64,000 nt of DNA from Magallana gigas (Eukaryota). The stretch covers positions 26,846,001-26,910,000 of the forward strand of contig NC_088862.1 in NCBI RefSeq assembly GCF_963853765.1, in the 5' to 3' direction. This document shows positions 17,414 through 49,824 of the stretch, one piece after another; the first letter of the stretch is position 1; each line of letters starts with the position of its first letter. Below the pieces are notes generated by a model that had not been told where the DNA came from, ran no database searches, and saw only the letters and a program-made list of their open reading frames with translations. The translations under genes were made by a program, and so were the position numbers.

Positions 17414-18979
17414 CTAATTCAGAAAATGTGATAGAGCTCGTTGGTAATCGATTATGAACACAAAGGAAAAAATTCTGAACACGATTTTTAACCAACGGAT
17501 ACAAGTTTTGTTCAACGACTCGACATTATCTGTGTTATTTTTGTTCTTTTTAAAATCAAAATTCCGATAGGTAATCATTCTTTTGTATATGATGAAAACA
17601 TAAGACATTAAAATATTTTAAAGACCCTTTGAATTTGATACTTTAGATCTCTTTATTATCAATAGCTTATTCGTACCTATTCGTAGAATACTTTCATGTT
17701 ACAACATTATTCAAGTGTTTAGATTGGAAAATAAAATAAGAGTGTCTTCGCTTTGTGAGAGATCTTTGTTTAAAATTGAAACAAGAAAACATCTTTCTTG
17801 GTGACAAAAGACATGCATTCGGTGGACATAAATATTGTATATAATAATAAATATTTGATTGAACATAACTGACGTACGCAATATATCTTATTCTCTACGT
17901 TTTCTCTCTCCTTCTCATATCCTTTGTCATAAGAAGGTTATACATGTATGAAAGTATCATTCAGCTGTAAACACACCTCCTTAATTGATTTCATTCTTTC
18001 CCAGCGCAATCACTGTCAGAATCATAAAAAGTGATAATTTTTTTCATCGTATACATGTATCACTGTTTATATTTTCCTAAAAAAATATTTTGACTCAACG
18101 CCTCAGTGCGAGATAAAAAGAAAGATAACTCGAGAACATATATATGCATTTTTTTAATCCTTGGATATCAAGGGCATAGAAAGAATGAAAAGATAAATCA
18201 AATTTAATGAGATGCCAAGAAGTATTTTCATATACAATTCTTGGAAATTTTAAAATGTTTTACATATGTTATTAAAAAAAAACATTATTACTGTAACAAA
18301 TATTTTAAATTTAATACAATAGTTAGATAAGGTATACTAAATGATTGAAAACCTCAAATAATGTCATTCATAAATAAACAAAAAATAAACAAATTGTATC
18401 ATCATACCAAAAACCCTCATCGGCACAAACCACGGCTTTGAGTCTTCCATCTTTTAATTCAGAAAATGTGATGTCAAAGTAAATCGCTCGTTGGTAATCG
18501 ACAATAAACACAAATGAAAAATTCTGAACACGATCGTAAGTTTTGTTTCAACGACTCATCATTAACTCTATTAATTTTTTCTCTTTTTAAAATCAAAATT
18601 TTGATAAGAGTGTTTCTTTGATATGTGATGAACATGCCATATTAATTTTATTATTCTTGAAATTTCTATTAAACATAAGACATTAAAAAATTTTCAAGAC
18701 TCTTTTTATCAAATGCCCAATTTTGAAGATCGCTGAGTAATCAATAGATTCTTTGTACCTCGTCGTAATGTAATTTCACGAGAAAGCATTTTTCAAGTGT
18801 TTGGAAGAGAAAACAAAATTAAAGTCTCTTCACTCTGTGTGCGATCTTTGTTTAAAAGAATTCGTTGTAGAATTGAAACACTCAAGCAAAAAAAAATTTC
18901 TCTTGATGACATAAGACATGCATTAGATGGACATAACTATTCCAAACAAATGCAGGTGATTGAACAAAGCTGACGTCAG

Positions 18980-19069
<90 letters not shown>

Positions 19070-19372
19070 CTTTCCGCACATGATTTGCAATATGAAGATT
19101 TTGGCAAACGGAATATGAAAGTAGCATTAAGCTGTGAAAACACCACCTTGATTAATGACACTCTTTTTAGCGCAATATTTGTTAGAACAGTGATTTATTT
19201 CTGCAGAATTATAGTGAAAACATAACGTATATCAATGTATGAAGAATTCCTAAAAACAATATTTGAACACGTGCCACGGCGCGAGATAAAAGGAAAGATA
19301 ACTCGAGCTGTTGCATATTTTTTTAATCATTGAATATCAAAGGCATAGGAGAAATAAAAGTATCATTTAAAG

Positions 19373-19375
<3 letters not shown>
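17414..19375. repeat. Two diverged tandem copies of a ~1-kb AT-rich repeat with (CT)n tracts (also present in unit 2)
   Basis: taattcagaaaatgtgat...ctcgttggtaatcga at 17414 and ~18455; gcgagataaaa-gaaagataactcgag at ~18110 and ~19280. Confidence 0.7.

Positions 19376-19465
<90 letters not shown>

Positions 19466-19606: not shown

Positions 19607-19656
<50 letters not shown>
18983..19656. repeat. Cluster of (CT)n/(TA)n microsatellites
   Basis: Tracts at ~18983-19069, 19381-19460 and 19608-19656. Confidence 0.95.
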
Positions 19657-19660
<4 letters not shown>

Positions 19661-20085
19661 AGTGATGTTTATCATCTATTAATGCTTCTTTAATGGCGAC
19701 AACATTGTCTGACAATGTTCACTATGAAATACTTTTTTATCGAGCGCCAACAAAAACTTTCCAAACAGCCATGATATCCTAGCCAACGTTCTCCTTTTAG
19801 TAAAGTAATCCAGATTCTATTATCAAGTGTGCTGCAATTGAACAGAAAATAAATTCAAGCTTTGTAGAAGCATTTTTTTTGGAAAGGGCGTAAATTGTTT
19901 CTGTAAAGAATGACTAAATTTCAGTTTAGCTCGCTTTTTTTGTTTAAGGTATTTATCATCAAATTCGAAGAATTTGCTAGATTATTATTTTTTCTTGTAA
20001 CAAAATAAAAAAATCAAGGATTTATATCAATATGAATTATTGTATACCTAAAACTCGTTGAGGAAGAATCTGAAGTTTTTCATTC

Positions 20086-20821
20086 TGTAAGCCTTCTGTC
20101 TTACAGGATCCTATTGAGGGTCAGCTCAAGCTTATGGATGACAAGTCCAGGATTTCTTTCTCAAGCGGTTTTATTAAGCGTGATCGTATAGTTACAATAA
20201 CATCAGCTAATAGCAGCCCAAATCAGGAGTCTGCACAATCTTATTTCATATGGGTATATATAAGGTTTTACTTATGATGGACAGTTTTGACTAGTTCGGC
20301 CCATATACGACGATCATGAGTGAACATTTAGTGTTCAAAATTAAGATTAATATTTTATTCCTAAATAAAGTAACAAAACCGTCAAAACTGCCAATCAAAG
20401 AGTCTGGATGCAGGATGTGGGTCTCCGAGTCCTGGGTCTCGGAGCCCCCCCACCTAGTATGAGGCATCACTTACTCACAATACGTTCATTCATACACGGC
20501 ATAAAAGGTTACAAAGGTTAATATATAGAATACACAATACATGACTCAATATAGAATACTAGAGCATTCGTTGCAGACACAGAATCGCCAAATAGGTCAC
20601 ATGTTGTTAAACTCTCAATTTGGATATTATTCTGCCCGTATTATGACCTGGTTTCATAACATCATTTAGGAATACTACGCATTGCTACAAGAGTCACAGA
20701 GTTCATTCTGTCAATTATCATTAACACCATTCAGTGCGCAGCATCTAGGTACACATAAATATCATAGTGACCATTATGTAATACTAGCAATTCAAGGTCA
20801 TAGCATGGCTATCTGTTTACA
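20086..20821 (-). repeat. 3' LTR (736 bp)
   Basis: TGTAAAC...GCTTACA on the minus strand; matches 31211-31946 except about 2 substitutions seen by eye. Confidence 0.97.
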
Positions 20822-20832
20822 TACGTCCCCCA
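20822..20832 (-). promoter_or_regulatory. Putative polypurine tract
   Basis: Minus strand TTTGGGGGACGTA directly before the 3' LTR TGT; the purine run is short. Confidence 0.6.
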
Positions 20833-21455
20833 AACAAAAGAAATATCCCGAAGGGAGATTTCTCATGCCTGGCGCCCGGAATAGGAAAGCGTCCTTGATC
20901 TACACTTGATCAGACGAACTTCCTAGTGACATACCAGTCAGAACATCTATGTTAAGAGATAGTAACAAGTGACATGTTTCCACCTCCGGCTTGGAACACC
21001 ATTCATCTATAAAAACAAATCTATACCCAGGATGTATACATGTTCATAAAATCATATAGCTTGATTATATCGCATTACAATCATGAAAACAATAATGAAT
21101 AAAGTATGATAATAATGACCAAGATGAAATAACCATAGTTGAATATAATCGTAATTCATCATCAAAGTAATACTAAGTATGATTAAGCTTGATGTCACAT
21201 ATATATAAAAAGTCACTGCATGCTTATAAGTTCACAAAAATATCTCTTCCTTCCTAGGGGCGAGGTTCGCGTCATAAGTTCGGAGTCCATCGGTTTCTTC
21301 CTGAATTTCTCCAGAGTGAATCAACAAATACAAGATTTACATTAGCACAAGATAACGCACATTTCTACTTTACACATTTCACATTTTTTTAACTTTCGCT
21401 AAATTTCACAATCCTTTCATAAGGAATACACAACTTCTTCGCGGCTGTAGCTCAA

Positions 21456-23700
21456 TTATTCATCCATCATCGGCACCCGTGGATAGAGGGTCGGCGCGGA
21501 TGGCGAGGCGACTTCTCGCGGAGCGTCTCCTGCGTTCCTCTGTTGCGTAGACATCGCGGCCTTCTCTTCCAGGTATTTACGTGCCAGCTCTGGGTCCGGT
21601 CGATAGTATTTGGTCCATGGATAGTCTTCATTTTCCTCCTCACCACGAAATTGTTGTGCTAGTTTAGTCGAAATGGTCCCCGCGTTACTGGCCAATTTGT
21701 GAGTTCCGATTCCTCCGCTTCGTCGGGGTTTCTCTTGGATCCTAGTGACTTTCGGGATTGGTTCAAGTTCAATAATGTCGCTAGAGGTCCTTTTCTCTGG
21801 ATTCTCACAACAAAATACAGTGTCTTTGGAAGAACCTTTCTTATCTCCGTCACTACCCCTTTTTCGACAACCTGTCCAGCAACCACTACAGCATATACCA
21901 TCCCACTTTTTAATAGTTTTACGTTTCTTAATACAAAGTCCTATCGTTATTGTTACTGCCAAAGTTAAACACACATAAAACCAGGGGCTTCCCACCCAAG
22001 ACGAGGATTTCATGGGTTGCAAATTAATTACTGGCAATTCCGCCATTAGTGCATTCATAGGGAAAATTTTAATATCTTTTAATTTGTCAGGAATTTTTAT
22101 TTGGCTAATTTCGGGGTGTCGGGTGTTTAGAGGGTCCCAAAGGGTGCAGGTATCGATCTCATTGATAAATTTTTGGAAAGAATTGGTCATGTTGAACTGA
22201 CTTTCTCTATTATAAAATGGTGGTAATAATAATGAACCGTGAAAACCCGAGCAACCTTGTCCCAAACTCAGAATGTCTATCGGGCTCTTAACCTTTGTAC
22301 TTTGTGTATTTTGTCCACATTTTACATTTATTTCTAATGGCTTTGAAGAAGTGATTAACCACTTTCCTTCACGCAAGTTGACCGCATTTGGATCAAGTAA
22401 CTTATTTTCTACTAATACTGAACAATGTTTTTCTATTTCTGGCAGGTTATTTATAAATATTTTTACTATATATGCATAAATCGCTCGAGCTTACGGGGTA
22501 AAAGGGTTTATTTATAGAACAAAAGTTCCCGTGTTGTCTTTTACATGCGTTGGTTTCTATTTTAGATAAGGTAGTGTATGTTCCCCGAACATCATCTATA
22601 GCGATTGCTTCAGTTTCGATATCATATCTAGCCAACAGATTTGATTGATTCGTTTTTAAATTCGGCACCGGGAGGTTATGGACCTTGAATAACTCAAATC
22701 GTTTGTTTGTATCTAACAGGGGTATAGTCATTGCAATTATGAGATTTTCCTCCCCAATTAATGTCGTACATGGTAAAATCCTATAATAAGACCAAAGGTC
22801 GGTGGTTATATCATAAGGTAATTTAAGATACGAGGGTAACTGATCTGAGATTTCTAACAACAGGCGCCTGAGATCTCCTGGGGGGATAACGGTTGGAGAG
22901 AGATGTCCTAAAGAAAGCATATTGAGACGTAAACGAAGTTGTTGTAAATGATTTCTAGTTACTGAGACGATTTCGGATAAACTACTTAATGTCCTGTCGA
23001 AACGTATGTAAATGTCATTAAATCTTTGCATGTCATGCAATTCTCTGCCCAGTGTTGATTGTTCTGTCATTGATTCCTTAAGACTAGTAATAATTTCATT
23101 TATTGTCCTGCGGTTGTCCATTATATTTTGCTGATTATCTTTAACAAAAGTCATACTTTCGGTTAATACATGTTTTATTTGCTGTTGATTATTGGCAAGC
23201 TGCCTAACATTGCTTCTAATACTGTTTAAATCTTCTTCGTCTAATGTACCGAAAAGAAAAGATAGGACTTTCCCTACAATTGGTATTACAGCTCTAGTAT
23301 TTCTACGGTGCATAAAACGAATTTCTTGTACCTCTTGTTCCAAATATCTTCTGTTTACCTTAAAATTGTTTATCTCAACTGAAAACCTTTCGCTCATTTG
23401 ATAAAGCCGAAAGATGGGTGTCATGCGAATAGTTTGATTAGTATCAGTGACTGATAGTTTCTTTGATTCATCCCCAATGGCTTGAACTAAAGTATTTTTG
23501 ACAGTTACTAATTCCGTTTGTAACAAATTAAGAATGGTATAATAAGGATTTAAGCTTATTGTCGTGATTGCTGTCCATTTTCCTTGCACCAGAGAAATAT
23601 CCTTAACTTTTTCAAAAATTACATTTTTCCTGACGATATTGTTTGCGAAAGGTATCCCAAACATTCCAGCTAGGAGGAATACTGTCAAGACCCACTTCAT
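21456..23700 (-). CDS. env: Envelope class I fusion protein (baculovirus F/errantivirus Env type), ~746 aa if repaired; frameshift at 22467-22473
   Basis: Signal peptide MKWVLTVFLLAGMFG; furin site RRNTR followed by AVIPIVGKVLSFLFGTLDEED, fitting the F-protein fusion-peptide pattern; heptad region; Cys-rich region; TM PWFYVCLTLAVTITIGLCI; 157-aa tail. Frame 1 stops after 417 aa; frame 2 is open from 22469 to 21456. Confidence 0.9.
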
Positions 23701-23707
23701 CCTGCAA

Positions 23708-24343
23708 TTAATAATTGAAACTTCTAATACAAGGGTGTTTGCAGAAAGTTCTTTCAAATTGGTACATCCAGCCAATTACATTCCTTCTCGTTTCTGACAT
23801 TTCTATCATTTTTGAATGAGTTTCTACTAAATCAAGTGGAAAGTGTTTTTTCATAAATTTGATGAAAGAGGGGTATAGCAGCAGCGTTTCATTATTTCCT
23901 ATCACTATGGCTTGTAGGGTTACTATTCTTTGAAATTCTGAATTTATCTTAAGCCTAGTAGGGCGATTTTGTTCCGCGATTCTCTGATAATTCATTATTT
24001 GAGCCTTAACCAATTCGGGTAAATCACGGATCAATTCACAGATTTTACTTAATGGTATATCTTCATCGTCAGATGTCATTGGGACTAATGCCTGAGGAAT
24101 TTCTACCTTAGGATGTGAAACTCTTGGAAGTTTTACAAATTTATTTCTTTCGAAGCCAGGTTGTAAGGAGCCCAAATTATAATGTAATTGTTGTGAGTTA
24201 GTATTTGTTCCCTGCTTCGGCATTTCTAGCTTCATTGACCATTCACGTTTTGGATCGGGTCTAAGTCTTGATTTGTCTGAAAATTTCTTCCCCGATTGTG
24301 AAAATGATGTAAGTGAGCGGGGCGACGGTCGTGGATCGGACAT
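23708..24343 (-). CDS. Accessory ORF D (211 aa): Pro/basic disordered N-terminus, SDDEDIPL motif, paralogous LPxxhxxxIMxYxR domain
   Basis: Intact ORF; acceptor TTCTTTTCAG|ATG; aligns to ORFs B and C without gaps over 33 aa. Confidence 0.8.
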   Translation of the reverse strand: MSDPRPSPRSLTSFSQSGKKFSDKSRLRPDPKREWSMKLEMPKQGTNTNSQQLHYNLGSLQPGFERNKFVKLPRVSHPKVEIPQALVPMTSDDEDIPLSKICELIRDLPELVKAQIMNYQRIAEQNRPTRLKINSEFQRIVTLQAIVIGNNETLLLYPSFIKFMKKHFPLDLVETHSKMIEMSETRRNVIGWMYQFERTFCKHPCIRSFNY

Positions 24344-24377
24344 CTGAAAAGAACGTTCGATATATTAAGACCTTGGA

Positions 24378-24812
24378 TTAACCCAACCTAAAAGGTTTAC
24401 CATTTATGTCAAGAAGTACTAATTCGTTTTCGATTGGATTGAAATCCATTATCACCCCATTTTCACCTACTCTAAACGAGTTTGGGACGACCTCGTTTGC
24501 TAGGATGAATTGTAAATACCTAGTCTCTTCGTGACCAATGGTATCAAAAAGATGATAAATTTCATCGAATTTTTTCTTAATTTTCAATAACCTGTTTATG
24601 TTCGTTATGAAAGTTGGACTAAATTTTCTAAAAAATGCATCAGCATATTCATCCATTCTCTTTAACTCTAACAAAACTGTTCTCTTTGGTTCGATTTCCG
24701 CGTTTGCCAAGCGATGGTATGTCATGATTTTATCCAAGATTAATGGGGGCAAATCTGGATAAATATCTTCTCCAGTGAATAATTCCCTGGGAGTTTTCTG
24801 ACTTTCGGCCAT
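24378..24812 (-). CDS. Accessory ORF C (144 aa), paralogue of B and D
   Basis: Intact ORF; acceptor TTCATTTATTTTACAG|AAATG; IYPDLPPLILDKIMTYHRLANAE. Confidence 0.85.
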   Translation of the reverse strand: MAESQKTPRELFTGEDIYPDLPPLILDKIMTYHRLANAEIEPKRTVLLELKRMDEYADAFFRKFSPTFITNINRLLKIKKKFDEIYHLFDTIGHEETRYLQFILANEVVPNSFRVGENGVIMDFNPIENELVLLDINGKPFRLG

Positions 24813-24872
24813 TTCTGTAAAATAAATGAATTATTACCTTATTTAGTACATAAGTTTAATAAGGCTCCCCAT

Positions 24873-25331
24873 TTAATGTGGTTCATTAAGATCTCTGAAC
24901 TGCATATTCAACCCGGCTGCGTCATTTTGAATACTCCCCATATCAACTAGATCTAGGACCATTGCCGACAGATACTCTAATTCTTCAGGTCCTAAGCGTT
25001 CACAATCCCTTAGAATTCTCATCATCAATTTTAGGTTTCGAATAAAGCTAGGTCTCAGTGTTTCCGGACTTAACCTCCTATTTAGGTACTTAGAATATAC
25101 GTTAAATCGCCTTAACTCTACATTGACATATTTCTTTGGGGTCAATTCCGCGTTTGCTATACGATGATACTTCATAATTTGATCGATAACAGGATAAGGT
25201 AGCTGGTCAGGGTAAATGTTCCCAGGGGTATATAATGAGTTGATCCTCATTGCTCTTTCCTCAAGGTTGTCAATGCTTTCCATTTCCTCTTCCTCTCTCC
25301 CTGATGGATGTTCCGATCTTGCACTTGCCAT
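24873..25331 (-). CDS. Accessory ORF B (152 aa from MASARS), paralogue of C and D
   Basis: Intact ORF; acceptor CATTTCTTGCAG|AAAATG; IYPDQLPYPVIDQIMKYHRIANAE. Confidence 0.85.
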   Translation of the reverse strand: MASARSEHPSGREEEEMESIDNLEERAMRINSLYTPGNIYPDQLPYPVIDQIMKYHRIANAELTPKKYVNVELRRFNVYSKYLNRRLSPETLRPSFIRNLKLMMRILRDCERLGPEELEYLSAMVLDLVDMGSIQNDAAGLNMQFRDLNEPH

Positions 25332-25476
25332 TTTCTGCAAGAAATGCAAGACATCAGGAACATCCACCCATGAACAAGAGAAAAGCTAAATTGCTATATC
25401 CCTATTTTTTTTTTTCTTTAATTATTAATAAGCATGATATATGTACAAAGCAAAGCTCATTCGAGATTATTTACAT

Positions 25477-25695
25477 CTACATTCGGTTTCGAGTGACCCC
25501 CTCCCTCCTAACGCTCGCGGAGGTGATTTCTCCTCTAATGATTAGCATAACCATATCAGAGTATGGCTCTGTATCACTCAAATAATGGCTGTATATGTTC
25601 AAGGTTGCTGTCAATGTGACTCCTCCAAACTTTATTTTGATATAAAGTTCACTAGGGGGCGTCAATCTCAGTTCCAATAACTCAGATTCTGACAT
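25477..25695 (-). CDS. Accessory ORF A (72 aa), unknown function
   Basis: Intact ORF starting 22 nt after the pol stop; acceptor CCTTTATTTTCAG|ATG. Confidence 0.7.
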   Translation of the reverse strand: MSESELLELRLTPPSELYIKIKFGGVTLTATLNIYSHYLSDTEPYSDMVMLIIRGEITSASVRREGVTRNRM

Positions 25696-25717
25696 CTGAA
25701 AATAAAGGATACTTTAT

Positions 25718-28700
25718 CTACCCTATTACTAACTGTTTTAAGACAACTAAACAATCCTCTTTAAATTTTTGTTTATTAGATTTACGGGGTTTAGGGATTG
25801 GTTTGAAGCCTAGACCTACTTTAGGGGCTATTTCATCTATTTCCATATTTTCTTCTAAGGGTACATTTGGGTTATCTAAGGGTATTTCATAGGCTTGACC
25901 ACTATTTTCACCACATTGATTTGACTCATGGGTCTCATCCGATTCTGAATCTACGGTCTGATCATTCTCGTGTTTATACTGCTGATCATCCATGATCGTC
26001 TTAGCTCTTATACGTCTTTGAAGTTCTGCTAGGGGAATATCCTCTTCGTCTGAAGATCCTTCTCTTTCCCATTGTTTGGACTGTATAGCTCTTTCCAATG
26101 GTTCTGGTTGCATGTCTTCATTTTCTGACGACGATTCATCTTCCGGTGGCACCACATAGTTAGTTTTTCTTAGAGTTCTTCCACCATCTTCAGTAGTTTG
26201 TGAAAGGGGCCAGTGCGAAATATCTGCCAATCTTAATTGTCGCGCATGGCATTTGGTGGTTAATCCAGTCAATTGATCTCTCACCACGAAACTAACTGGT
26301 CCTTTCTGCTCTATGATTCGATAATACGGTAGCCACTTTTTATCTAACTTATTTTGTCTTCTGTTGTTCTTAAGGTAGACAGGGTCACCTACCTGAAAAT
26401 TTTCATCTTTGCTTCTCTTATCGGCCTGAGCTTTCTGTTTCTTCTTGGCTTCCTTCATATTACGATGTACTAGCAGGAAAGCTTTATGCTGTTCTTGAAG
26501 GGCAATCTTGTGTTGATCTTCTCCCGCATATCTCCTTCGAGGTTTCATTAACGTATCAAGAGGTAATACGACATCTCTGTTGTACATAAGGTAATATGGG
26601 GAAAACTTTGACGAATCGTTAGGATGGAAACGAATGGCTGCCAACGTCTGATTAAGATGAATATCCCATGTTTGAGCGTTGTCTGTTGTTTTCTTAGCCA
26701 TCACGTCATGTAGAGTTCTATGAAATCGTTCTACTTTACCATTACCTTGAGGGCTGTAATAAGATGTTTTGATATGGTTGATATTCAATTCTTTTAAAGT
26801 TTCTTCCACTTTCTTATTCACATTTTCTGTTCCGTTGTCTGTGAGGATTTGAAGAGGACAGCCATATCTTGGATATATTTCTTCTAAGATAAGATGTACT
26901 ATGTTGTCAGCTGACTTATCAGGGACGGGAAAAGCTTCTGGCCAACCAGAGTAAATGTCTATAAAAGAAACTATGTACTTGTTTCCCGACAAGGATGTTG
27001 GATATGGTCCTGATAGATCAAGTCCTACTTTAGCCATTGGAAAAGGTGGTATATCTGTCTCTTGAAGTGGAGGTTGATTTTTCTTATTGCTCCTCGTTTG
27101 GCATACTACACATCCTTCTATATAAGAGTATAACCTTTTGTACAAATTTGGTATGTAGTACTTTTGTCTGATTACGTCATATGTTTTGTCCACTCCCATA
27201 TGTCCAAGTCCGTCATGATACTGCTGCACTACTAAAAGTTCTAACTCACGTGGTACATACAGGCGAAGTTTTGGGCCTTCTGAGTCTCCATCTGAAAGAT
27301 AGTACATTAAACCATCAATTTCCAGAAACTTCTTTTCTTCGGTTGCCGTTGCTGTTCCTTTATTTAACCGATTCTTCAGTTTCTTGATCTGCTCGTCGTG
27401 TTGTTGACTTTCTTTGATGTTGATATCCTCTGGTAGATCAATAAAGGGTTTGACCAATTCGTCGTTTTGTTTAACTTCACATCTGGCTAATCTCTTAGGC
27501 GAAAAGGCATTGGAGTTAAGTACGTTCACTTCAAAGAAATTGTCCTTAACATCTGGTTCATCATGCTCTGATTGTTCTTCCTCTTCACACTCGAGGTTGA
27601 CTGTCGGTAATCGGGATAAGAGATCTGCACAGCAGTTAAATCTTCCTTCTATGTACTCTACCTTACAGTTATATCCTGCAATACTTAATGCCCATAGTTG
27701 AATTTTCTTATTTTGCATTGGAGAGTCTAAGATATACTTGAGCGGCTTATGGTCTGTTCTTATAGTAAACTGAGCACCGTGTAAATAATGGTCTAACTTC
27801 TGAAGGGCGTAATGGATTGCAAATGCCTCCTTTTCTATGGTTGACCACTTTTCTTGAGTTTTACTCAGCTTGTGGGATAAGTAATATATTGGCTTATCTT
27901 CTCCCTCATCTGTCTTTTGAGTAAGGCACGCTCCAATACATTTGTCGCTGGCATCGGTGTACAGGATGTAAGGCTTATTAGTATCTGGATATGCTAGTAA
28001 AGGCACTACCGTTAAACTTTCTTTAATAAAGTCAAACGCTTTTTGGCAACATGGCGTCCATTTGAACCTTGCATATTTTCTGGTTAAGTCAATCAATGGT
28101 TCCGCAATCTTAGAGAAATTCGGTATAAATCTCCTGTAATAACTACACATACCTATAAAGCCACGAACTTCTCGGACTGTAGTGGGCGCTGGTAACTTTC
28201 TTATAGCTTCGACTTTCTTTGAATCAGGTGTAACGCCATGTTCATCAATGATGAAACCAAGATATTCTGTCTGTTCCTTGAAGAAACTACATTTCTTTAG
28301 CTTCATTTTAAGTCCATGCTTCCTTAGGCGGTTGAAAACGTCTTGAATATGCCGAAGATGATCTTCCGGTGTCTCTGAGAATATAAGAATGTCATCCAGG
28401 TATGCGATGGCAAACTCCTCTTGTCCTTGAAGAACTATGTTCATCAGCTCTTGAAAGACTGCCGGTGCATTACTCAACCCAAATGGCATCCGGTTGAATT
28501 GGAATAGTCCTTTGTGACATGCAAAGGCCGTTTTTTCTTTACTTGAATCTTCTAATTTCACTTGCCAATATCCACTCTTTAAGTCTAGTGCAGTGAAATA
28601 TTTTGCCTTACCTAGTAAACATAGGATATCATCAATCAACGGTAGCGGGAATGATACGGGTTTCACTATCTTATTCAAGCTTCTAAAGTCAACGCACATC

Positions 28701-29779
28701 CGGTCTGATCCGTCCTTTTTCTTCACCACTACTAAGGGAAATGACCAAGGCGATTGTGATCTCTCAATAATCTTTGCGTCCATCATTTCTAGTATGGCCT
28801 TGTCAATTATCTGTCTTTTATTTAAGGGTACACGGTAGGGTCTGTTCTTTATTGGGTGGTGATCTCCAGTTTCTATCTTCATTTTAACAGTATCAGTCAC
28901 TCCAAGGTCACTGTCTTTCTTTGCAAATAAATCATTGTTTTTGCTCACAAGTCTTTTGATTGAGAGTTCAAATCTTTTAGGTACATCAATTTCTTCTTTT
29001 GTGTCTTGAGTAGTCTGTATTTCTGAGATTTCCTTCTGTTTTAATGCGGTAATTCGTCCTACTATGTAGCCTCTTGGAATTTTATAATTTTTGTTAGTTT
29101 GGTTAACGAAGATCATTGGAACTTTCTTATCCTTCCGAACTATACAAACGGCGTCTTTTAAATATAGTCCTGGGTCTTCCATAATGCAGTTATTGTCTAT
29201 GCTGTTCACTTCAACCAAGTCATTTTTTTCCAGAGGAAAATTGTTATTTATTTTTCCATAGAATACAGTCACCGTGTTTGGTCTCATAATAAGTTTCTTA
29301 GGAGTTCTTACAATAGTTGAGATGTGTAAATCTTCTTTAAGTTCCGCGTATACTTTGCCATCAATACGCATGAGTCCAAGATCAAAGTATAAACGAACAT
29401 TGTTTTTCTTGAGCCAATCACGACCGAGAATCATGTTTCGGTTGAGTCCCTTTGTCACATAAAGTCTGTGGTCTAAAGTTAACCCTGAAATCTTAAAGGA
29501 AATATTTACATACCCTATCGCAATTAAAGAATTGCCATTTGCTGCTTGTAAAGAGGGGATGTCATTATTAAACAACTTGGGGCGGGGAAATAGATTATCA
29601 TACATTTTCTTACTAATTAGAGATACGGCTGCGCCTGTATCTACCAAAGCTCTAAATTTATTTTTACCTACTTTTAATAAACAGCTACTGGGGTTGTTAG
29701 TAAAATTAATTTCATATGTAGGTCTTTGTTTAAAGTTCTTTCTTCGGGCTTCAACGAAGGAAGAACGTCTTAGTTTTCC
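25718..29779 (-). CDS. pol: Pol polyprotein (aspartic protease, RT, RNase H, integrase), expressed by -1 frameshift from gag
   Basis: LVDTGA; VDFRSLN; AYLDDILIFS; LYTDAS; integrase HHCC (HDGLGH...CVVC) and D,D(35)E (GLD, TDNG, VERF); FQVGDPVYL; long acidic tail. The frame is open upstream of the listed ORF start as far as the gag end. Confidence 0.97.
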   Translation of the reverse strand, partial: GKLRRSSFVEARRKNFKQRPTYEINFTNNPSSCLLKVGKNKFRALVDTGAAVSLISKKMYDNLFPRPKLFNNDIPSLQAANGNSLIAIGYVNISFKISGLTLDHRLYVTKGLNRNMILGRDWLKKNNVRLYFDLGLMRIDGKVYAELKEDLHISTIVRTPKKLIMRPNTVTVFYGKINNNFPLEKNDLVEVNSIDNNCIMEDPGLYLKDAVCIVRKDKKVPMIFVNQTNKNYKIPRGYIVGRITALKQKEISEIQTTQDTKEEIDVPKRFELSIKRLVSKNNDLFAKKDSDLGVTDTVKMKIETGDHHPIKNRPYRVPLNKRQIIDKAILEMMDAKIIERSQSPWSFPLVVVKKKDGSDRMCVDFRSLNKIVKPVSFPLPLIDDILCLLGKAKYFTALDLKSGYWQVKLEDSSKEKTAFACHKGLFQFNRMPFGLSNAPAVFQELMNIVLQGQEEFAIAYLDDILIFSETPEDHLRHIQDVFNRLRKHGLKMKLKKCSFFKEQTEYLGFIIDEHGVTPDSKKVEAIRKLPAPTTVREVRGFIGMCSYYRRFIPNFSKIAEPLIDLTRKYARFKWTPCCQKAFDFIKESLTVVPLLAYPDTNKPYILYTDASDKCIGACLTQKTDEGEDKPIYYLSHKLSKTQEKWSTIEKEAFAIHYALQKLDHYLHGAQFTIRTDHKPLKYILDSPMQNKKIQLWALSIAGYNCKVEYIEGRFNCCADLLSRLPTVNLECEEEEQSEHDEPDVKDNFFEVNVLNSNAFSPKRLARCEVKQNDELVKPFIDLPEDINIKESQQHDEQIKKLKNRLNKGTATATEEKKFLEIDGLMYYLSDGDSEGPKLRLYVPRELELLVVQQYHDGLGHMGVDKTYDVIRQKYYIPNLYKRLYSYIEGCVVCQTRSNKKNQPPLQETDIPPFPMAKVGLDLSGPYPTSLSGNKYIVSFIDIYSGWPEAFPVPDKSADNIVHLILEEIYPRYGCPLQILTDNGTENVNKKVEETLKELNINHIKTSYYSPQGNGKVERFHRTLHDVMAKKTTDNAQTWDIHLNQTLAAIRFHPNDSSKFSPYYLMYNRDVVLPLDTLMKPRRRYAGEDQHKIALQEQHKAFLLVHRNMKEAKKKQKAQADKRSKDENFQVGDPVYLKNNRRQNKLDKKWLPYYRIIEQKGPVSFVVRDQLTGLTTKCHARQLRLADISHWPLSQTTEDGGRTLRKTNYVVPPEDESSSENEDMQPEPLERAIQSKQWEREGSSDEEDIPLAELQRRIRAKTIMDDQQYKHENDQTVDSESDETHESNQCGENSGQAYEIPLDNPNVPLEENMEIDEIAPKVGLGFKPIPKPRKSNKQKFKEDCLVVLKQLVIG
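29735..29779 (-). promoter_or_regulatory. -1 ribosomal frameshift signal (G GAA AAC, 6-nt spacer, 11-bp stem-loop)
   Basis: G_GAA_AAC_TAA at 29779-29770; stem GTTCTT-C-CTTCG / CGAAG-A-AAGAAC (29766-29735) with an 8-nt loop. Confidence 0.75.
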
Positions 29780-31089
29780 TGTTTTTGTTTGTCAAAATAA
29801 GAGCGCGATTTGAAATTTTGAGACGATCCCCTATTTACTTGGTCGCTAGATTTATATGTTCGGCCTTGACGATTTGATGGTCTGCCCCGATTTTGCTGCG
29901 TTCTTTGATACATATGCGAGCCCCAACAATCTGCACGCACATGACCTACTTTACCACAATTCCAACATTCCACAGGCGAACGGGGTTTCTGCTCTATATT
30001 ATGGACGGGTTTGTTTTGACTTGGTCGTTTATCTATTTGAGGACGGGACCTGACTTGGGATTTATTTTGAGTACAAAATCGAGCCCTATGACCCGTCTGT
30101 TTACATTTAAAACACCTACTATTACGCGCATGGTCAATTTCCATTGGTTCTACATGCCTTGTCTCTACTGAGGTAAGATTATCTGCTCTATCCTTTAATA
30201 AGGGAAGAGTAGTATCAAAATTTGAAAGAGTTCGTCTGTTGTCATTACTTTGTACAATTTCTGTCATATTTGACCCTCTTATCGCTAGCCTCTGTCTCAG
30301 ATTTTGTTCTCGCATTGCTATTTGAATTGCGGATTCTAAATCTTTAGGGTTTTCTCGCAAAATTTTCATTCTGAGGTAGTCGAATGTCAACCCGTCACAA
30401 AAGATATCTACTAACTGTTGTTGTATCAAAGGGTCTTTTAGTCTGTCATTACTGTAGGCGTCTTCCGCGATTTGCAATAGTCTCTCGGCGAACAACTGAA
30501 CACTTTCATTTGAATGTTGTCGAGTCTTACGCATTACTGCTAACGCGTGTTGGGGGTCTGTTATTTCTGCAAATCTATTTTTAAGGGATTCCTTAAGATC
30601 GTTCCAAGATGGGATTTCTTCAGACGCATCTGTTTCATCTAAATACCTTTTAATATAATCCCCAACTGAACCCTTACTCGTTATGTATGCAAGCATGGGG
30701 ATCTCATGACCTTGTTTCCCAGACATAACACTGTACTTTTCAACTTCCTTTATCCACTGTTTAAATTTTTGAGCATCTCCCTCAAAAGGAGTTATCACAG
30801 AAGATAGGGGCACTGAGAGTGCAGCTGTTATAGCTTTAACTTGACCAATAAAAAAATCTTTTTCATCATCCTGATCTGGGACTCGGTGTCGAGTTTCACG
30901 AGTTTCATACGGCCTAGCATCATGATATGTTTCAAAAGTATTTTGTTTAATCTGCTCTTTTTCTGGGGATTTTTGACCTGTTTCTTGCCCTTTATTTTCT
31001 TTGTTCTGACCCAACCCCGCGAATTGTTTTTCTAATTGCTCCATTTGATTTTTAAATTCTTTTTTATCAAACCCATCACCTGTCGCCAT
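29770..31089 (-). CDS. gag: Gag polyprotein (439 aa) with capsid-like core and two CCHC zinc knuckles
   Basis: CFKCKQTGHRARFC and CWNCGKVGHVRADC; AATATGG start context; lies between the PBS and pol. Confidence 0.95.
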   Translation of the reverse strand: MATGDGFDKKEFKNQMEQLEKQFAGLGQNKENKGQETGQKSPEKEQIKQNTFETYHDARPYETRETRHRVPDQDDEKDFFIGQVKAITAALSVPLSSVITPFEGDAQKFKQWIKEVEKYSVMSGKQGHEIPMLAYITSKGSVGDYIKRYLDETDASEEIPSWNDLKESLKNRFAEITDPQHALAVMRKTRQHSNESVQLFAERLLQIAEDAYSNDRLKDPLIQQQLVDIFCDGLTFDYLRMKILRENPKDLESAIQIAMREQNLRQRLAIRGSNMTEIVQSNDNRRTLSNFDTTLPLLKDRADNLTSVETRHVEPMEIDHARNSRCFKCKQTGHRARFCTQNKSQVRSRPQIDKRPSQNKPVHNIEQKPRSPVECWNCGKVGHVRADCWGSHMYQRTQQNRGRPSNRQGRTYKSSDQVNRGSSQNFKSRSYFDKQKQEN

Positions 31090-31150
31090 ATTGGTTGCTT
31101 AGACAAAGTTGTTTACTTCGAGATAGCTATAAGAGACATATAGAAATGGT

Positions 31151-31159
31151 TCTTACCTT
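31151..31159 (-). promoter_or_regulatory. Leader splice donor AAG|GTAAGA (exon ends at 31157)
   Basis: Near-consensus 5' splice site between the PBS and the gag ATG, where retroviral major donors lie. Confidence 0.75.
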
Positions 31160-31182
31160 ACTCTGTATTGAACTTCGCTCAG

Positions 31183-31200
31183 TCCTGGTCACTGGCACCA
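31183..31200 (-). promoter_or_regulatory. Primer-binding site, probably tRNA-His(GUG)
   Basis: TGGTGCC(A)GTGACCAGGA is complementary to a recalled invertebrate tRNA-His 3' end (TCCTGGTCACGGCACCA) with one bulged nt; it starts 10 nt after the 5' LTR. Confidence 0.65.
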
Positions 31201-31210
31201 AGAAAGTTCA

Positions 31211-31946
31211 TGTAAGCCTTCTGTCTTACAGGATCCTATTGAGGGTCAGCTCAAGCTTATGGATGACAAGTCCAGGATTTCTTTCTCAAGCGGTTTTATT
31301 AAGCGTGATCGTATAGTTACAATAACATCAGCTAATAGCAGCCCAAATCAGGAGTCTGCACAATCTCATTTCATATGGGTATATATAAGGTTTTACTTAT
31401 GATGGACAGTTTTGACTAGTTCGGCCCATATACGACGATCATGAGTGAACATTTAGTGTTCAAAATTAAGATTAATATTTTATTCCTAAATAAAGTAACA
31501 AAACCGTCAAAACTGCCAATCAAAGAGTCTGGATGCAGGATGTGGGTCTCCGAGTCCTGGGTCTCGGAGCCCCCCCACCTAGTATGAGGCATCACTTACT
31601 CACAATACGTTCATTCATACACGGCATAAAAGGTTACAAAGGTTAATATATAGAATACACAATACATGACTCAATATAGAATACTAGAGCATTCGTTGCA
31701 GACACAGAATCGCCAAATAGGTCACATGTTGTTAAAATCTCAATTTGGATATTATTCTGCCCGTATTATGACCTGGTTTCATAACATCATTTAGGAATAC
31801 TACGCATTGCTACAAGAGTCACAGAGTTCATTCTGTCAATTATCATTAACACCATTCAGTGCGCAGCATCTAGGTACACATAAATATCATAGTGACCATT
31901 ATGTAATACTAGCAATTCAAGGTCATAGCATGGCTATCTGTTTACA
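31211..31946 (-). repeat. 5' LTR (736 bp)
   Basis: Partner of 20086-20821; candidate TATA-like (31379-31388 or ~31645-31652) and AATAAA (31295-31300, 31479-31484) signals on the minus strand. Confidence 0.97.
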
Positions 31947-32465
31947 ATTCCTTATGCAAAGTTTGGCTTAAAATGTTTATTTTTTAATCTCAACTCCCCA
32001 TTTTATACTTTAAAATAAAAATTAATGATTAAGATTAAGAACCGTTTTTAAAAGAGTTTGGATTTTTGGTGGGATGTAACTATCTTCTTTGTTTATCAAA
32101 TATTGACATCTTTTCTTCGCATTCGCTAGGAGAAGCTAATTTATTTCATAGACTTCAAAATCGGAAAGTTATTTGCCAAGATTTGCTCTGTTGTGTGAAA
32201 TTTGACGCTGTTTTAACGAAATGTACATTTTTGAATGAAGTAAGAGGAGAGTCAATGAGTTCAGTGTACTCTTTTTCGTTAGCCAATTATATGACACCTA
32301 ACCTAGAGTAGGCCACGCTTTCATCCCATCGGATTTTATCACGTACCGCCCAAAATCCAAGCTCTTGTAAAAACATCGGTGTATTTGATTTGTTTCTCAA
32401 GTTCTTTGTAAAACCATGTTTTAAAAGCAGGGCAAATCTTCATAGAACAAAAAAATCCCTTTGTG

Positions 32466-33401
32466 TCAACATATTTCACATAGGGTAGAAAACCCTTTAG
32501 GTAGATATTTTTTCACACGCAAGTAAACAACTTCAGAAAACAACAGATAAATGATGGGGTTAACAGAAAATTTTAACATCCAAGCCATCCGAGCAATCAA
32601 CAACAAACTCCTGCACTCGTATTCTGAGCAACAAACACCAAAATAAATCAAACAGAAACACAGCGGATAGAGGGCCGCCGACATCGTGAAGACTGTCAAG
32701 ATGACCGTCAACATTCTTGACAACACTATCATCTGGGTTTTTGCACGCATAATACTCTTTGATCCTCCACTAGCCCGGAGTTGACAGGGCAATACATCTG
32801 TCTTCAGTGACGTAATTTTTTTAACATGGAAATAAATGATGAAGCAAATTGGAAGAAACAGTAAGTATCCCCGAAACAACAGAACGGTGGGTAGAACGTC
32901 CATATCTATGTGGAAGCGAAGAATGTAGTACACAATTGTAAAACACACACTCAATATCCAAAGCATCCCTGAAATCTTTAATAACTTTCTCTTTGAGAGG
33001 GTTTTGTACTGAAGAGGTTTTACAACACAATAGTACCGAAGGCCAACAAGAAATACCACATGGGCCGCCGATGCATGAGTAGTTCCAAAAGTTGCTGACA
33101 TGAAGAATTTTTCAAATGTACGGATATCTGTTTTTAATTCAAACAATAAAACAACAAGGAAAGTGATGCCATATAAACTAACAGTCACCAAGTCACTCAT
33201 GATTAGCGCAGCGATGGCAAAATAAGTCTGTGTGTGTAAACGTTTGTACGAAACAATTTTAGCGAATGCAACGGTATGACCAGCAATTCCACATACTGTC
33301 AAGACAGGAATTATTACTCTCATGAACGAAGATTCCACCTCAATGTGCACAGGAATCGTGAGGGAAAGATAGCCTTGAATTTGAGAACAATTTCGATCCA
33401 T
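32466..33401 (-). CDS. Class A (rhodopsin-like) 7TM receptor, copy 1 (311 aa, intronless CDS)
   Basis: Seven hydrophobic segments; LxxxD in TM2, LRY at the DRY position, TM4 Trp, TM5 Pro, NPIIY in TM7. Confidence 0.88.
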   Translation of the reverse strand: MDRNCSQIQGYLSLTIPVHIEVESSFMRVIIPVLTVCGIAGHTVAFAKIVSYKRLHTQTYFAIAALIMSDLVTVSLYGITFLVVLLFELKTDIRTFEKFFMSATFGTTHASAAHVVFLVGLRYYCVVKPLQYKTLSKRKLLKISGMLWILSVCFTIVYYILRFHIDMDVLPTVLLFRGYLLFLPICFIIYFHVKKITSLKTDVLPCQLRASGGSKSIMRAKTQMIVLSRMLTVILTVFTMSAALYPLCFCLIYFGVCCSEYECRSLLLIARMAWMLKFSVNPIIYLLFSEVVYLRVKKYLPKGFSTLCEIC

Positions 33402-49679: not shown

Positions 49680-49824
49680 NNNNNNNNNNNNNNNNNNNNN
49701 NNNNNNNNNNNNNNNNNNNNNNNNNNNNNNNNNNNNNNNNNNNNNNNNNNNNNNNNNNNNNNNNNNNNNNNNNNNNNNNNNNNNNNNNNNNNNNNNNNNN
49801 NNNNNNNNNNNNNNNNNNNNNNNN
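49680..49824. other. Assembly gap (N run)
   Basis: 145 N. Confidence 1.

What the first reader, a model, noticed from the sequence alone, without database searches (positions are those of the whole stretch)
20086..31946. Complex-retrovirus-like Ty3/Gypsy element: gag-pol-four accessory genes-env
Seen: a complete, young 11.9-kb element with four intact ORFs (72, 152, 144 and 211 aa) packed between pol and an F-type env with almost no spacer. ORF A starts 22 nt after the pol stop, and ORF D's last codons overlap the env acceptor. Established: errantiviruses (gypsy, ZAM) are gag-pol-env with spliced env; arrays of accessory genes are typical of complex vertebrate retroviruses (lenti-, spuma-, epsilonretroviruses). 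Inference: a potentially infectious invertebrate endogenous retrovirus lineage with its own accessory-gene module. I cannot confirm novelty without a search.
Basis: partly seen in the sequence, partly recalled or inferred. Interest (0 to 1): 0.92.

Follow-up and report, generated by a model that had tools for sequence, protein, structure and literature searches.

The report
Oyster-type retroelement with four extra genes
This is a young retrovirus-like mobile element, probably in an oyster-type mollusc genome, that carries four conserved extra genes between its polymerase and envelope genes, each placed directly behind a splice-acceptor-like signal, a layout otherwise typical of complex vertebrate retroviruses.

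Summary
An 11,861-bp LTR element lies on the minus strand at 20086-31946. It has 736-bp LTRs with 2 mismatches and a 4-bp target duplication. It encodes gag, pol (PR-RT-RH-IN, nearest solved relative Ty3), four small ORFs (72, 152, 144 and 211 aa) and a Baculo_F-type env. It is not fully intact: env carries one frameshifting indel that four near-identical sibling copies lack.

The four ORFs are real genes. They keep their order and length in at least five diverged sister lineages. Their dN/dS is 0.10-0.30, against 0.05 for pol and 0.08-0.09 for env, even where synonymous sites are saturated.

Three points are new. ORFs B, C and D are paralogues sharing a helical domain of about 110 aa with no detectable relative outside these elements. 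B and C evolve 4-6 times faster than pol. Each of A, B, C, D and env has a pyrimidine tract plus C/TAG 0-3 nt before its ATG, conserved across lineages, and the leader holds a strong donor-like site. This points to five alternatively spliced subgenomic mRNAs.

What the accessory proteins do is unknown. Env-carrying Ty3/gypsy elements in molluscs are already published, but I found no description of this module.

The parts
20086..31946 (-). Whole LTR retroelement, 11,861 bp
   Evidence: LTR pair, target-site duplication and gene order
31947..31950 (-). Target-site duplication (GAAT on the element strand), 5' side
20082..20085 (-). Target-site duplication (GAAT), 3' side
31211..31946 (-). 5' LTR, 736 bp, TG..CA. 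It holds a TATA-like box near 31380-31387 and an AATAAA near 31295-31300.
20086..20821 (-). 3' LTR, 736 bp, 2 mismatches to the 5' LTR
31183..31200 (-). Primer-binding-site-like 18-mer starting TGG, 10 nt after the LTR. It matches the distant element L004 at 16 of 17 positions.
   Evidence: The tRNA it pairs with was not identified.
31151..31164 (-). Splice-donor-like site in the leader (AAG|GTAAGA, with a second overlapping GTAAG), about 70 nt before the gag ATG
   Evidence: L004 has AAG|GTAGAA about 40 nt before its gag ATG. Its use as a donor is inferred.
29770..31089 (-). gag, 439 aa, intact: capsid-like domain and two CCHC zinc knuckles
25718..29791 (-). pol, intact, in the -1 frame relative to gag with a 22-nt overlap: protease, RT, RNase H, integrase, then a long acidic C-terminal tail
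25696..25710 (-). Acceptor-like pyrimidine tract plus CAG directly abutting the ORF A ATG
25477..25695 (-). ORF A, 72 aa, intact. It is unrelated to B, C and D.
25335..25350 (-). Acceptor-like tract plus CAG, 3 nt before the ORF B ATG
24873..25331 (-). ORF B, 152 aa from its ATG, intact; paralogue of C and D
24815..24830 (-). Acceptor-like tract plus CAG, 2 nt before the ORF C ATG
24378..24812 (-). ORF C, 144 aa, intact; paralogue of B (35% identity, E 1e-19)
24344..24358 (-). Acceptor-like tract plus CAG directly abutting the ORF D ATG
23708..24343 (-). ORF D, 211 aa, intact: about 95 aa of basic, proline-rich N-terminal region predicted disordered, a conserved acidic motif, then the helical domain shared with B and C
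23702..23716 (-). Acceptor-like CAG 1 nt before the env ATG (TAG in some lineages). Its upstream tract overlaps the end of ORF D.
21456..23700 (-). env, F-type: signal peptide, R-x-x-R cleavage motif followed by a fusion-peptide-like segment, transmembrane segment and long cytoplasmic tail. It is broken once by a frameshift in this copy.
20822..20834 (-). Polypurine-tract-like G run directly before the 3' LTR

Best explanation
The region is a recently inserted provirus-like copy of a mollusc Ty3/gypsy (Metaviridae) element of the envelope-carrying kind that Chary and Hayashi call 'ancient errantiviruses'. Its genome is enlarged by a conserved module of four accessory genes between pol and env.

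Shown:
- Ordinary LTR-retroelement anatomy: LTRs with TATA-like and AATAAA signals, PBS-like and PPT-like sites, a 4-bp target duplication, gag, and pol in the -1 frame.
- An F-type fusion glycoprotein gene.
- Four further ORFs that stay open, in the same order and under purifying selection, across lineages whose synonymous sites are saturated.
- B, C and D are paralogues sharing a helical domain of about 110 aa.

Inferred expression mechanism: unspliced RNA made from the 5' LTR serves as genome and as mRNA for Gag and, through a -1 frameshift, Gag-Pol. A single strong donor in the leader is then joined to one of five alternative acceptors. Each acceptor sits 0-3 nt in front of the ATG of A, B, C, D or env, so each singly spliced mRNA presents its own ORF as the first long reading frame.

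Inferred function (weak): an element with five internal acceptors must still export and package unspliced RNA. I therefore think it most likely that at least one accessory protein acts on the element's own RNA, controlling export or splice balance, as Rev does in lentiviruses and CERV does in C. elegans Cer1. ORF D is the best candidate, with its basic disordered N-terminus, conserved acidic serine motif and helical domain. The fast-evolving paralogues B and C would then deal with host factors.

This copy cannot make full-length Env because of one frameshift. Sibling copies have that stretch open.
For: Anatomy:
- Searches give the LTRs, target duplication, PBS, PPT, TATA and AATAAA.
- One search gives Pfam hits for gag, PR, RT, RNase H, IN and Baculo_F.
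- One search gives Ty3 Gag-Pol as best solved relative (E 6e-107), against about 1e-43 or weaker for retroviral RTs.

A-D are genes:
- The order pol-A-B-C-D-env recurs in L001 and L003. B-C-D-env recurs in L002, L005 and L007, C-D-env in L009-L018 and A-B-C-D-env in L019-L026.
- Lengths are kept: A 72-73 aa, B 148-160, C 135-144, D 208-212.
- NG86 dN/dS is 0.28-0.30 for A, 0.09-0.24 for B, 0.14-0.19 for C and 0.10-0.17 for D (0.32 in the near-identical window-L002 pair). pol is 0.05 and env 0.08-0.09. pS exceeds 0.8 between the window and L003 lineages for B and C.
- ORF A has six further relatives at 71-99% identity, five of 72 aa and one of 68 aa, plus an exact match to the window's own protein.

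Paralogy: B against C gives E 1e-19, B against D 2e-4, C against D 1e-3. They share invariant columns.

Splicing model:
- A pyrimidine tract plus C/TAG lies 0-3 nt before all five ATGs.
- The strict form of the motif occurs at 5.6% of the 285 ATGs on the element strand, yet at 4 of the 4 accessory starts.
- It is kept in the L001/L003, L002, L005, L007, L009 and L028 lineages, and partly in L008, despite diverged spacers. The env site varies CAG/TAG.
- Donor-like AAG|GTAAGA lies in the leader, with a counterpart in L004.

Precedent: a spliced Cer1 mRNA encodes CERV, which is required for export of unspliced genomic RNA (PMC10309623).
Against: - I obtained no transcript evidence. All sister contigs are colinear with the unspliced element, and the library type (DNA or RNA) of the Logan runs is unknown.
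- Splice sites were judged by consensus only, not with a trained model.
- The donor could be compared in only one distant relative.
- The env acceptor fails my strict pyrimidine-tract criterion.
- One decayed copy lacks the B motif (L007) and another the D motif (L008).
- Nothing is known of function. There are no Pfam, NCBIfam, PDB or fold matches, and the AlphaFold models are poor (pLDDT 55 and 51). The Rev/CERV-like role is an argument from need, not from likeness.
- The distant relative L004 has two unrelated ORFs in the same slot, and these lack acceptor motifs at their ATGs.
Confidence: 0.72

Rival explanations
1. ORFs A-D are chance or decaying open frames in a long pol-env spacer and have no function.
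For: They are small and have no database homologues outside these elements. Some sister copies carry a broken or shortened C or D: L005, L007, L025, L026 and L027.
Against: All four stay open with the same order and length across lineages with saturated synonymous divergence. dN/dS is 0.10-0.30 in many independent pairs. Start-site motifs are conserved.
Confidence: 0.03
2. A-D are real genes but are translated from the unspliced or env mRNA by reinitiation, leaky scanning or internal ribosome entry, or from internal promoters, not from separately spliced mRNAs. On this view the CAG-ATG motifs are start-context or composition effects.
For: Spacers are very short: 7-60 nt, and 145 nt before B. 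That is the pattern of polycistronic viral mRNAs. I have no junction evidence. The two ORFs in L004 lack the motif.
Against: Reinitiation after about 1,750 codons of gag-pol is implausible. The motif includes a pyrimidine tract and an invariant AG, which is not a known translation-start context. The env site keeps AG while C and T interchange, as expected of an acceptor. The motif is rare at other ATGs (5.6%). Errantivirus env is known to be made from a spliced mRNA; this is established knowledge that the finding also states.
Confidence: 0.15
3. The module is a recent capture of host cellular genes, with B, C and D arising from a duplicated host gene, and is a passenger rather than an adapted viral function.
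For: LTR elements do capture extra ORFs, as in bdelloid rotifers (PMC5408684) and plants (PMC7264820). The slot holds unrelated ORFs in L004, so its content has turned over.
Against: A profile search of 1.84 billion representative proteins found only 36 clusters. All but one are small ORFs; every contig I fetched is element-like, and the only named member is a D-env-tail chimera. The exception is a bacterial protein at E 1e-4 that I regard as a chance match. No free-standing host homologue appeared. The module predates the split of lineages whose synonymous sites are saturated.
Confidence: 0.1

Closest known systems
Envelope-carrying Ty3/gypsy elements of non-insect metazoans ('ancient errantiviruses', F-type env), Chary and Hayashi, eLife 2026 (PMC13524379)
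   Same: Ty3/gypsy pol, an F-type (Baculo_F / paramyxovirus-F-like) env downstream of pol, and mollusc hosts reported. Env homologues at 31-42% identity are annotated in Mytilus, Argopecten, Haliotis and Lottia.
   Different: That survey describes gag-pol-env elements only. [quoted passage not shown] This element has about 2 kb there, so it would have been missed. The main text does not mention accessory genes or splicing.
Insect errantiviruses (gypsy, ZAM and relatives)
   Same: LTR element with gag, pol in the -1 frame, an F-type env and a 4-bp target duplication. Env is made from a spliced subgenomic mRNA (established knowledge).
   Different: Those have three ORFs and here there are seven. 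Whether pol has the insect-type duplicated pseudo-RNase H was not tested. The host is a mollusc.
Complex retroviruses (lenti-, delta-, spuma-, epsilonretroviruses)
   Same: Several small accessory genes cluster around env. The inferred expression uses one leader donor and multiple alternative acceptors. The accessory proteins evolve fast.
   Different: pol is Ty3-like, not retroviral. No accessory protein shows any similarity to a retroviral one. All accessory ORFs are single uninterrupted frames lying upstream of env. No two-exon gene of the tat/rev type was supported.
Cer1 of C. elegans and its CERV protein (PMC10309623)
   Same: An invertebrate Ty3/gypsy-type element in which an extra, novel protein is made from a spliced mRNA and is needed to export unspliced genomic RNA. 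This is the closest functional precedent for what I propose for ORF D.
   Different: Cer1 has one such protein and here there are four. Sequence similarity was not tested, because no comparator sequence was on hand. Any shared function is purely inferred.
LTR retrotransposons with additional ORFs (bdelloid rotifers, PMC5408684; plant aORFs, PMC7264820)
   Same: An extra ORF is taken up downstream of pol, and its content turns over between lineages.
   Different: Those usually carry a single ORF3, often enzymatic (GDSL lipase, DEDDy exonuclease, dUTPase). Here there is an array of four non-enzymatic-looking small proteins in addition to env, three of them paralogous.

Membership tests
Ty3/gypsy (Metaviridae) LTR retroelement | Long terminal repeats ending TG..CA, flanked by a short target-site duplication | tested here: met
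   736-bp LTRs, 2 mismatches, TG..CA, 4-bp GAAT duplication
Ty3/gypsy (Metaviridae) LTR retroelement | pol domain order protease, RT, RNase H, integrase | tested here: met
   Pfam positions 1-81 (protease), 308-467 (RT), 530-659 (RNase H), 798-989 (integrase)
Ty3/gypsy (Metaviridae) LTR retroelement | RT closer to Ty3/gypsy than to Retroviridae or other classes | tested here: met
   Ty3 Gag-Pol at E 6e-107 and Ty3 RT at 2e-91, against about 1e-43 or weaker for foamy and gamma-retroviral RTs. No full phylogeny was made.
Ty3/gypsy (Metaviridae) LTR retroelement | gag with a capsid-like domain and CCHC zinc knuckles | tested here: met
   Retrotrans_gag, Ty3_capsid (below cut-off) and two zf-CCHC hits
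Ty3/gypsy (Metaviridae) LTR retroelement | tRNA primer-binding site and polypurine tract | tested here: inconclusive
   A TGG-initiated 18-mer lies 10 nt after the LTR and is conserved in L004. A G run precedes the 3' LTR. The cognate tRNA was not identified, and the window holds no tRNA gene.
Envelope-carrying Ty3/gypsy ('errantivirus' in the broad sense, F-type) | env in sense orientation between pol and the 3' LTR, homologous to baculovirus F / errantivirus Env | tested here: met
   PF12259 at E 5e-13 covering profile positions 36-386. There are 48 homologues, many with PF12259 and full lengths of about 660-690 aa. The gene is frameshifted once in this copy.
Envelope-carrying Ty3/gypsy ('errantivirus' in the broad sense, F-type) | Class I fusion-protein landmarks: signal peptide, basic cleavage site followed by a fusion peptide, transmembrane anchor | tested here: met
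   Read directly from the translations. The cleavage and fusion-peptide segment is conserved in L003 and L004.
Envelope-carrying Ty3/gypsy ('errantivirus' in the broad sense, F-type) | Position in the POL RT/connection tree, and an RNase H plus 'mini' domain bridge (PMC13524379) | not tested
Genus Errantivirus in the strict sense (insect gypsy-like) | Three-ORF genome (gag, pol, env) and an insect-type duplicated pseudo-RNase H | tested here: not met
   Seven ORFs, with four conserved genes between pol and env. The RNase H duplication itself was not tested.
Complex retroviruses (Retroviridae) | Retroviridae-type pol | tested here: not met
   Ty3 is by far the best solved relative.
Complex retroviruses (Retroviridae) | Accessory or regulatory genes besides gag, pol and env | tested here: met
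   Four conserved ORFs under purifying selection
Complex retroviruses (Retroviridae) | Several alternatively spliced subgenomic mRNAs | tested here: inconclusive
   Conserved acceptor-like motifs at all five downstream ATGs and a donor-like site in the leader. No transcript data.
Complex retroviruses (Retroviridae) | Homology of accessory proteins to tat, rev, vif, vpr, bel, orf-a and similar | tested here: not met
   No named hit came back from Pfam, PDB sequence, PDB fold or viral fold searches. The fold models are of low confidence.
Cer1/CERV-type export regulator | A protein from a spliced element mRNA that is required for export of unspliced genomic RNA | not testable with these tools
   This is a functional property. 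The only support is argument by analogy.

The most novel reading that the evidence does not exclude
A mollusc Metaviridae lineage has independently evolved the complex-retrovirus way of life. On this reading a leader donor with five alternative acceptors drives a programme of spliced mRNAs. One accessory protein, probably D, rescues unspliced genomic RNA for export and packaging. A duplicated, fast-evolving pair, B and C, engages host defences. The family is still active in oyster populations.
Probability: 0.25. Interest if true: 0.88.

Novelty: new variant of a known kind. Interest (0 to 1): 0.72.

Why it matters
Arrays of accessory genes and multi-acceptor splicing are treated as a hallmark of complex vertebrate retroviruses. 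Invertebrate env-carrying Ty3/gypsy elements are described as simple gag-pol-env units.

A conserved, selected four-gene module with its own splice architecture in a mollusc element would show that this level of genome complexity arose independently outside Retroviridae. It would also supply a new protein domain family (B/C/D) of unknown fold whose evolutionary rate suggests interaction with the host.

There is a practical point too. Published surveys that cap the pol-env distance will systematically miss such elements. The family is abundant and near-identical across many sequenced individuals, so descriptive transcript and population data to test the model probably already exist.

Tried and rejected
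1. A rev/tat-like two-exon gene. The UniRef protein K1QVZ6 of Magallana gigas (P0038) joins the N-part of a D-like ORF to a tail resembling the end of env. The corresponding window positions have neither GT nor AG. I regard it as a deleted copy or a gene-model artefact.
2. Fold-based function. The AlphaFold models of C and D are poor (pLDDT 55 and 51). Foldseek against PDB and BFVD gave nothing at E 0.001 or better.
3. Sequence-based function. Pfam, NCBIfam and a PDB profile search gave nothing.
4. Origin of B/C/D from gag, or of A from B/C/D. hhalign found no relation.
5. Homology between the two L004 ORFs and A-D. None found. The 125-aa ORF of L008 is not detectably related to ORF A.
6. More loci from JGI metagenomes. 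Two scans found no confirmed relative.
7. Host identification. Exact look-up of ORF C and of a neighbouring receptor protein found nothing on record. A search for the run accessions in papers found none. The host is inferred to be an oyster-type bivalve only from the Magallana hit and the mollusc env hits.
I rebuilt the alignment without them and did not send them elsewhere.
9. Not informative. The bacterial promoter scan does not apply to this element, and Rfam found no known RNA family.
10. One literature search was too loose to be useful.

Full report
**1. Observation**

- The element is real and lies on the minus strand. Two 736-bp direct repeats (20086-20821 and 31211-31946) differ at 2 positions, begin TG and end CA. 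Each is flanked by the same 4 bases, GAAT on the element strand.
- The element contains no N. The window holds no second copy and no solo LTR.
- The LTR carries a TATA-like box and, about 85 nt further on, AATAAA.
- A TGG-initiated 18-mer lies 10 nt after the 5' LTR. A G run directly precedes the 3' LTR.
- In element order the ORFs are gag (29770-31089), pol (frame open 25718-29791, -1 relative to gag, 22-nt overlap), ORF A (72 aa), B (152 aa from its ATG), C (144 aa), D (211 aa) and env (outer bounds 21456-23700).
- The spacers are 22, 145, 60, 34 and 7 nt.

**2. Identity of the core genes**

- Pfam finds a retrotransposon Gag/capsid domain and two CCHC knuckles in gag. In pol it finds protease, RT, RNase H and integrase in that order. 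In env it finds Baculo_F (PF12259, E 5e-13).
- The best solved relative of pol is the Ty3 Gag-Pol polyprotein (E 6e-107). Retroviral RTs score about 1e-43 or weaker.
- Env has a signal peptide, an R-x-x-R site followed by a fusion-peptide-like segment that is conserved in relatives, a transmembrane segment and a long tail.
- Env homologues at 31-42% identity, typically 660-690 aa, are annotated in Mytilus, Argopecten, Haliotis and Lottia.
- Chary and Hayashi (eLife 2026, PMC13524379) have described mollusc Ty3/gypsy elements with F-type env.

**3. State of this copy**

- gag, pol and A-D are uninterrupted.
- Env is not. Six intact relatives map onto it in exactly two reading frames with no stop.
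- Four sibling contigs at 99% identity or more read env open for 481-560 codons to the contig end. They differ from the window by exactly one indel whose length is not a multiple of three and which is not in a homopolymer run.
- Env is therefore broken once, by a frameshift, and 'complete' is not correct. Whether this is a mutation or an assembly error cannot be decided here.
- With 2 differences in 736 bp between the LTRs the insertion is young. I give no absolute age because I have no substitution rate for the host.

**4. The four ORFs are genes**

- A profile of B, C and D found 43 proteins, nearly all from Logan assemblies, plus one UniRef entry from Magallana gigas.
- Fetched contigs show the same gene order in diverged lineages:
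  - pol-A-B-C-D(-env) in L001 and L003;
  - B-C-D-env in L002, L005 and L007;
  - C-D-env in ten samples of a further lineage that is on record in 56 blocks of the collection;
  - A-B-C-D-env in near-identical siblings from many runs.
- Amino-acid identity between the window and the L003 lineage is 88% for pol, 79% for A, 72% for D and the N-terminal part of env, 61% for B and 47% for C. The synonymous difference pS exceeds 0.8 for B and C.
- Where synonymous sites are not saturated, Nei-Gojobori dN/dS is 0.28-0.30 for A, 0.09-0.24 for B, 0.14-0.19 for C and 0.10-0.17 for D, with 0.32 in one near-identical pair. pol is 0.05 and env 0.08-0.09.
- ORF A has six further relatives at 71-99% identity, five of 72 aa and one of 68 aa, plus an exact match to the window's own protein.
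- A few sister copies have a broken or shortened C or D, as expected of decaying insertions.

**5. New anatomy of the module**

- B and C are clear paralogues (35% identity, E 1e-19). D is a more distant one (E 2e-4 against B, 1e-3 against C).
- All three align over about 110 residues with invariant L-P, Y, R, A, E, R, F and E columns.
- D adds about 95 N-terminal residues rich in P, K, R and S, predicted disordered, and a conserved acidic motif S-D-[DE]-E-D-I-P-L.
- A weakly similar motif sits in the C-terminal tail of pol (E 0.003) and twice in the pol tail of L004.
- A is unrelated to B, C and D.
- A profile search of 1.84 billion representative proteins returned 36 clusters. All but one are small ORFs from Logan or JGI assemblies, plus the single UniRef entry; every contig I fetched is element-like. 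The exception is a bacterial protein at E 1e-4 that I regard as a chance match.
- More distant D-like (30-40% identity) and B/C-like proteins exist. One decayed distant copy, L008, has a single B/C-like gene before a D-like gene and env fragments. This suggests the B/C duplication is lineage-specific.
- A distant element from a TARA metagenome, L004 (env 39% identical), has two ORFs of 135 and 192 aa in the same slot with no detectable similarity to A-D.
- Another contig shows three ORFs after pol, upstream of env.
- The pol-env slot is thus a recurrent site of gene gain in this group.

**6. Expression model**

- Directly upstream of each downstream ATG lies a pyrimidine-rich tract ending in CAG. 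The gap to the ATG is 0 nt for A, 3 nt for B, 2 nt for C, 0 nt for D and 1 nt for env.
- A strict version of the motif occurs at 16 of the 285 ATGs on the element strand (5.6%) but at all four accessory starts. The env site has the CAG but a weaker tract.
- The motifs are retained in the L001/L003, L002, L005, L009 and L028 lineages, in most sites of L007, and in part in L008, although the spacers have otherwise diverged. At env, CAG and TAG alternate while AG is kept.
- The leader holds AAG|GTAAGA about 70 nt before the gag ATG. L004 has AAG|GTAGAA about 40 nt before its gag ATG, and a PBS-like sequence matching at 16 of 17 positions.
- The two ATGs in the presumed leader exon open very short frames that end before the donor (read from the sequence printed).
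- I infer one donor and five alternative acceptors, giving five singly spliced mRNAs, each led by its own ORF.
- This is inference from conserved signals. The contigs I could fetch are all colinear with the unspliced element.
- Two contigs begin exactly at the AG before ORF A. That is where a leader exon ending in AAG and an intron ending in CAG would converge. The library type is unknown, and other contig ends are explained by SNPs between copies.

**7. Function**

- Nothing can be read from homology or fold. Pfam, NCBIfam, the PDB sequence profile, and Foldseek against PDB and BFVD are all negative, and the models are of low confidence.
- My committed but weakly held view rests on need. An element with five internal acceptors needs a way to export and package unspliced RNA.
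- Rev does this in lentiviruses (established knowledge). CERV, a novel protein from a spliced mRNA, does it in the C. elegans element Cer1 (PMC10309623).
- D, the slowest-evolving paralogue, with a basic disordered arm and a conserved acidic serine motif, is the best candidate.
- B and C evolve 4-6 times faster than pol at non-synonymous sites (dN 0.32 and 0.45 against 0.075) yet remain under purifying selection. That pattern is typical of proteins that interact with host factors.
- I put about 0.25 on this functional reading.

**8. Comparison and novelty**

- The element passes the tested defining features of Ty3/gypsy and of the broad, F-type envelope-carrying group. It fails the three-ORF definition of insect errantiviruses. 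It is not a member of Retroviridae (see the membership table).
- It works like a complex retrovirus in organisation only.
- Searches of the held literature found no description of accessory genes in mollusc or other metazoan env-carrying Ty3/gypsy elements.
- The main survey limited the POL-ENV gap to 1,000 nt and the collected POL-ENV region to 3-10 kb for non-insect genomes. That would exclude this family.
- Repbase could not be consulted.
- I rate it a new variant of a known kind.

**9. Surroundings**

- The element sits in AT-rich DNA, about 30% GC against 38% for the element.
- It lies about 520 nt from the first of three tandem intronless rhodopsin-type receptor ORFs.
- The host is probably an oyster-type bivalve. 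This is inferred from the Magallana hit and the mollusc env relatives and was not confirmed.

**10. Declaration of a slip**

- Notebook entries 1 and 3, written before and while I established that env is broken, give the coordinates of the two env reading frames as the ORF listing printed them, and these bracket the break.
- I have left the entries as written and have not repeated those coordinates here.
- Env is given as one part.
- No repaired, joined, consensus or ancestral sequence was built. Alignments across the break were used for counts and outer bounds only.

Noticed in passing
window 32466-33401, 38053-38988, 44977-45912 (minus strand): Three tandem, intronless 311-aa ORFs each match the rhodopsin-family 7tm_1 domain (E about 1e-10). 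This is a local receptor gene array, and the element is inserted about 520 nt from the first copy.
   Followed up: partly
window 687-1139 (minus strand), next to N run 1160-1297: A 150-aa ORF with immunoglobulin-domain hits (I-set, Ig_3), probably an exon of a host gene, abuts an assembly gap. A second N run lies at 49680-49824.
   Followed up: no
window 18074-18202 and 19247-19371; (CT)n runs at about 18980-19060, 19375-19465 and 19610-19660: A direct repeat with a period of about 1.17 kb (77-78% identity) and long CT microsatellites lie just outside the 3' LTR.
   Followed up: no
window pol C-terminal tail (within 25721-26380) and ORF D (23708-24343); L004 pol tail: A short acidic motif S-D-[DE]-E-D-I-P-L occurs in the integrase-distal tail of pol and in every D-like protein (pairwise E 0.003). 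It occurs twice in the pol tail of the distant element L004. It may be a shared short linear motif for a host partner.
   Followed up: partly
P0038 (UniRef K1QVZ6_MAGGI, Magallana gigas): This annotated 123-aa protein joins the N-part of a D-like ORF to a tail resembling the end of the env cytoplasmic tail. The corresponding window positions have no GT or AG, so it is probably an internally deleted copy or a gene-model artefact.
   Followed up: yes
L004 5510-5917 and 5937-6515 (TARA metagenome scaffold, complete gag-pol-x-x-env element): A distant relative (env 39% identical) carries two ORFs of 135 and 192 aa in the pol-env slot. They are unrelated to A-D and lack acceptor-like motifs at their ATGs. 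Its env ATG does have a strong one.
   Followed up: partly
L025 and L026 (Logan runs SRR6063243 and SRR6063390), position 1: Both contigs start exactly 2 nt before the ORF A ATG. That is the point where a leader exon ending AAG and an intron ending CAG would share sequence, so it is compatible with spliced reads in those runs. The library type is unknown.
   Followed up: partly
window 25332-25476 (A-B spacer) and siblings L019-L027: The A-B spacer contains an A-rich run. Its length varies from 132 to 152 nt among copies that are otherwise 99% identical or more.
   Followed up: no
L008 (Logan run SRR25445065): A decayed distant copy has a 125-aa ORF with an acidic tail, not detectably related to ORF A, then one broken B/C-like gene, a D-like gene and several env fragments. 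This suggests an ancestral module with a single B/C gene.
   Followed up: partly
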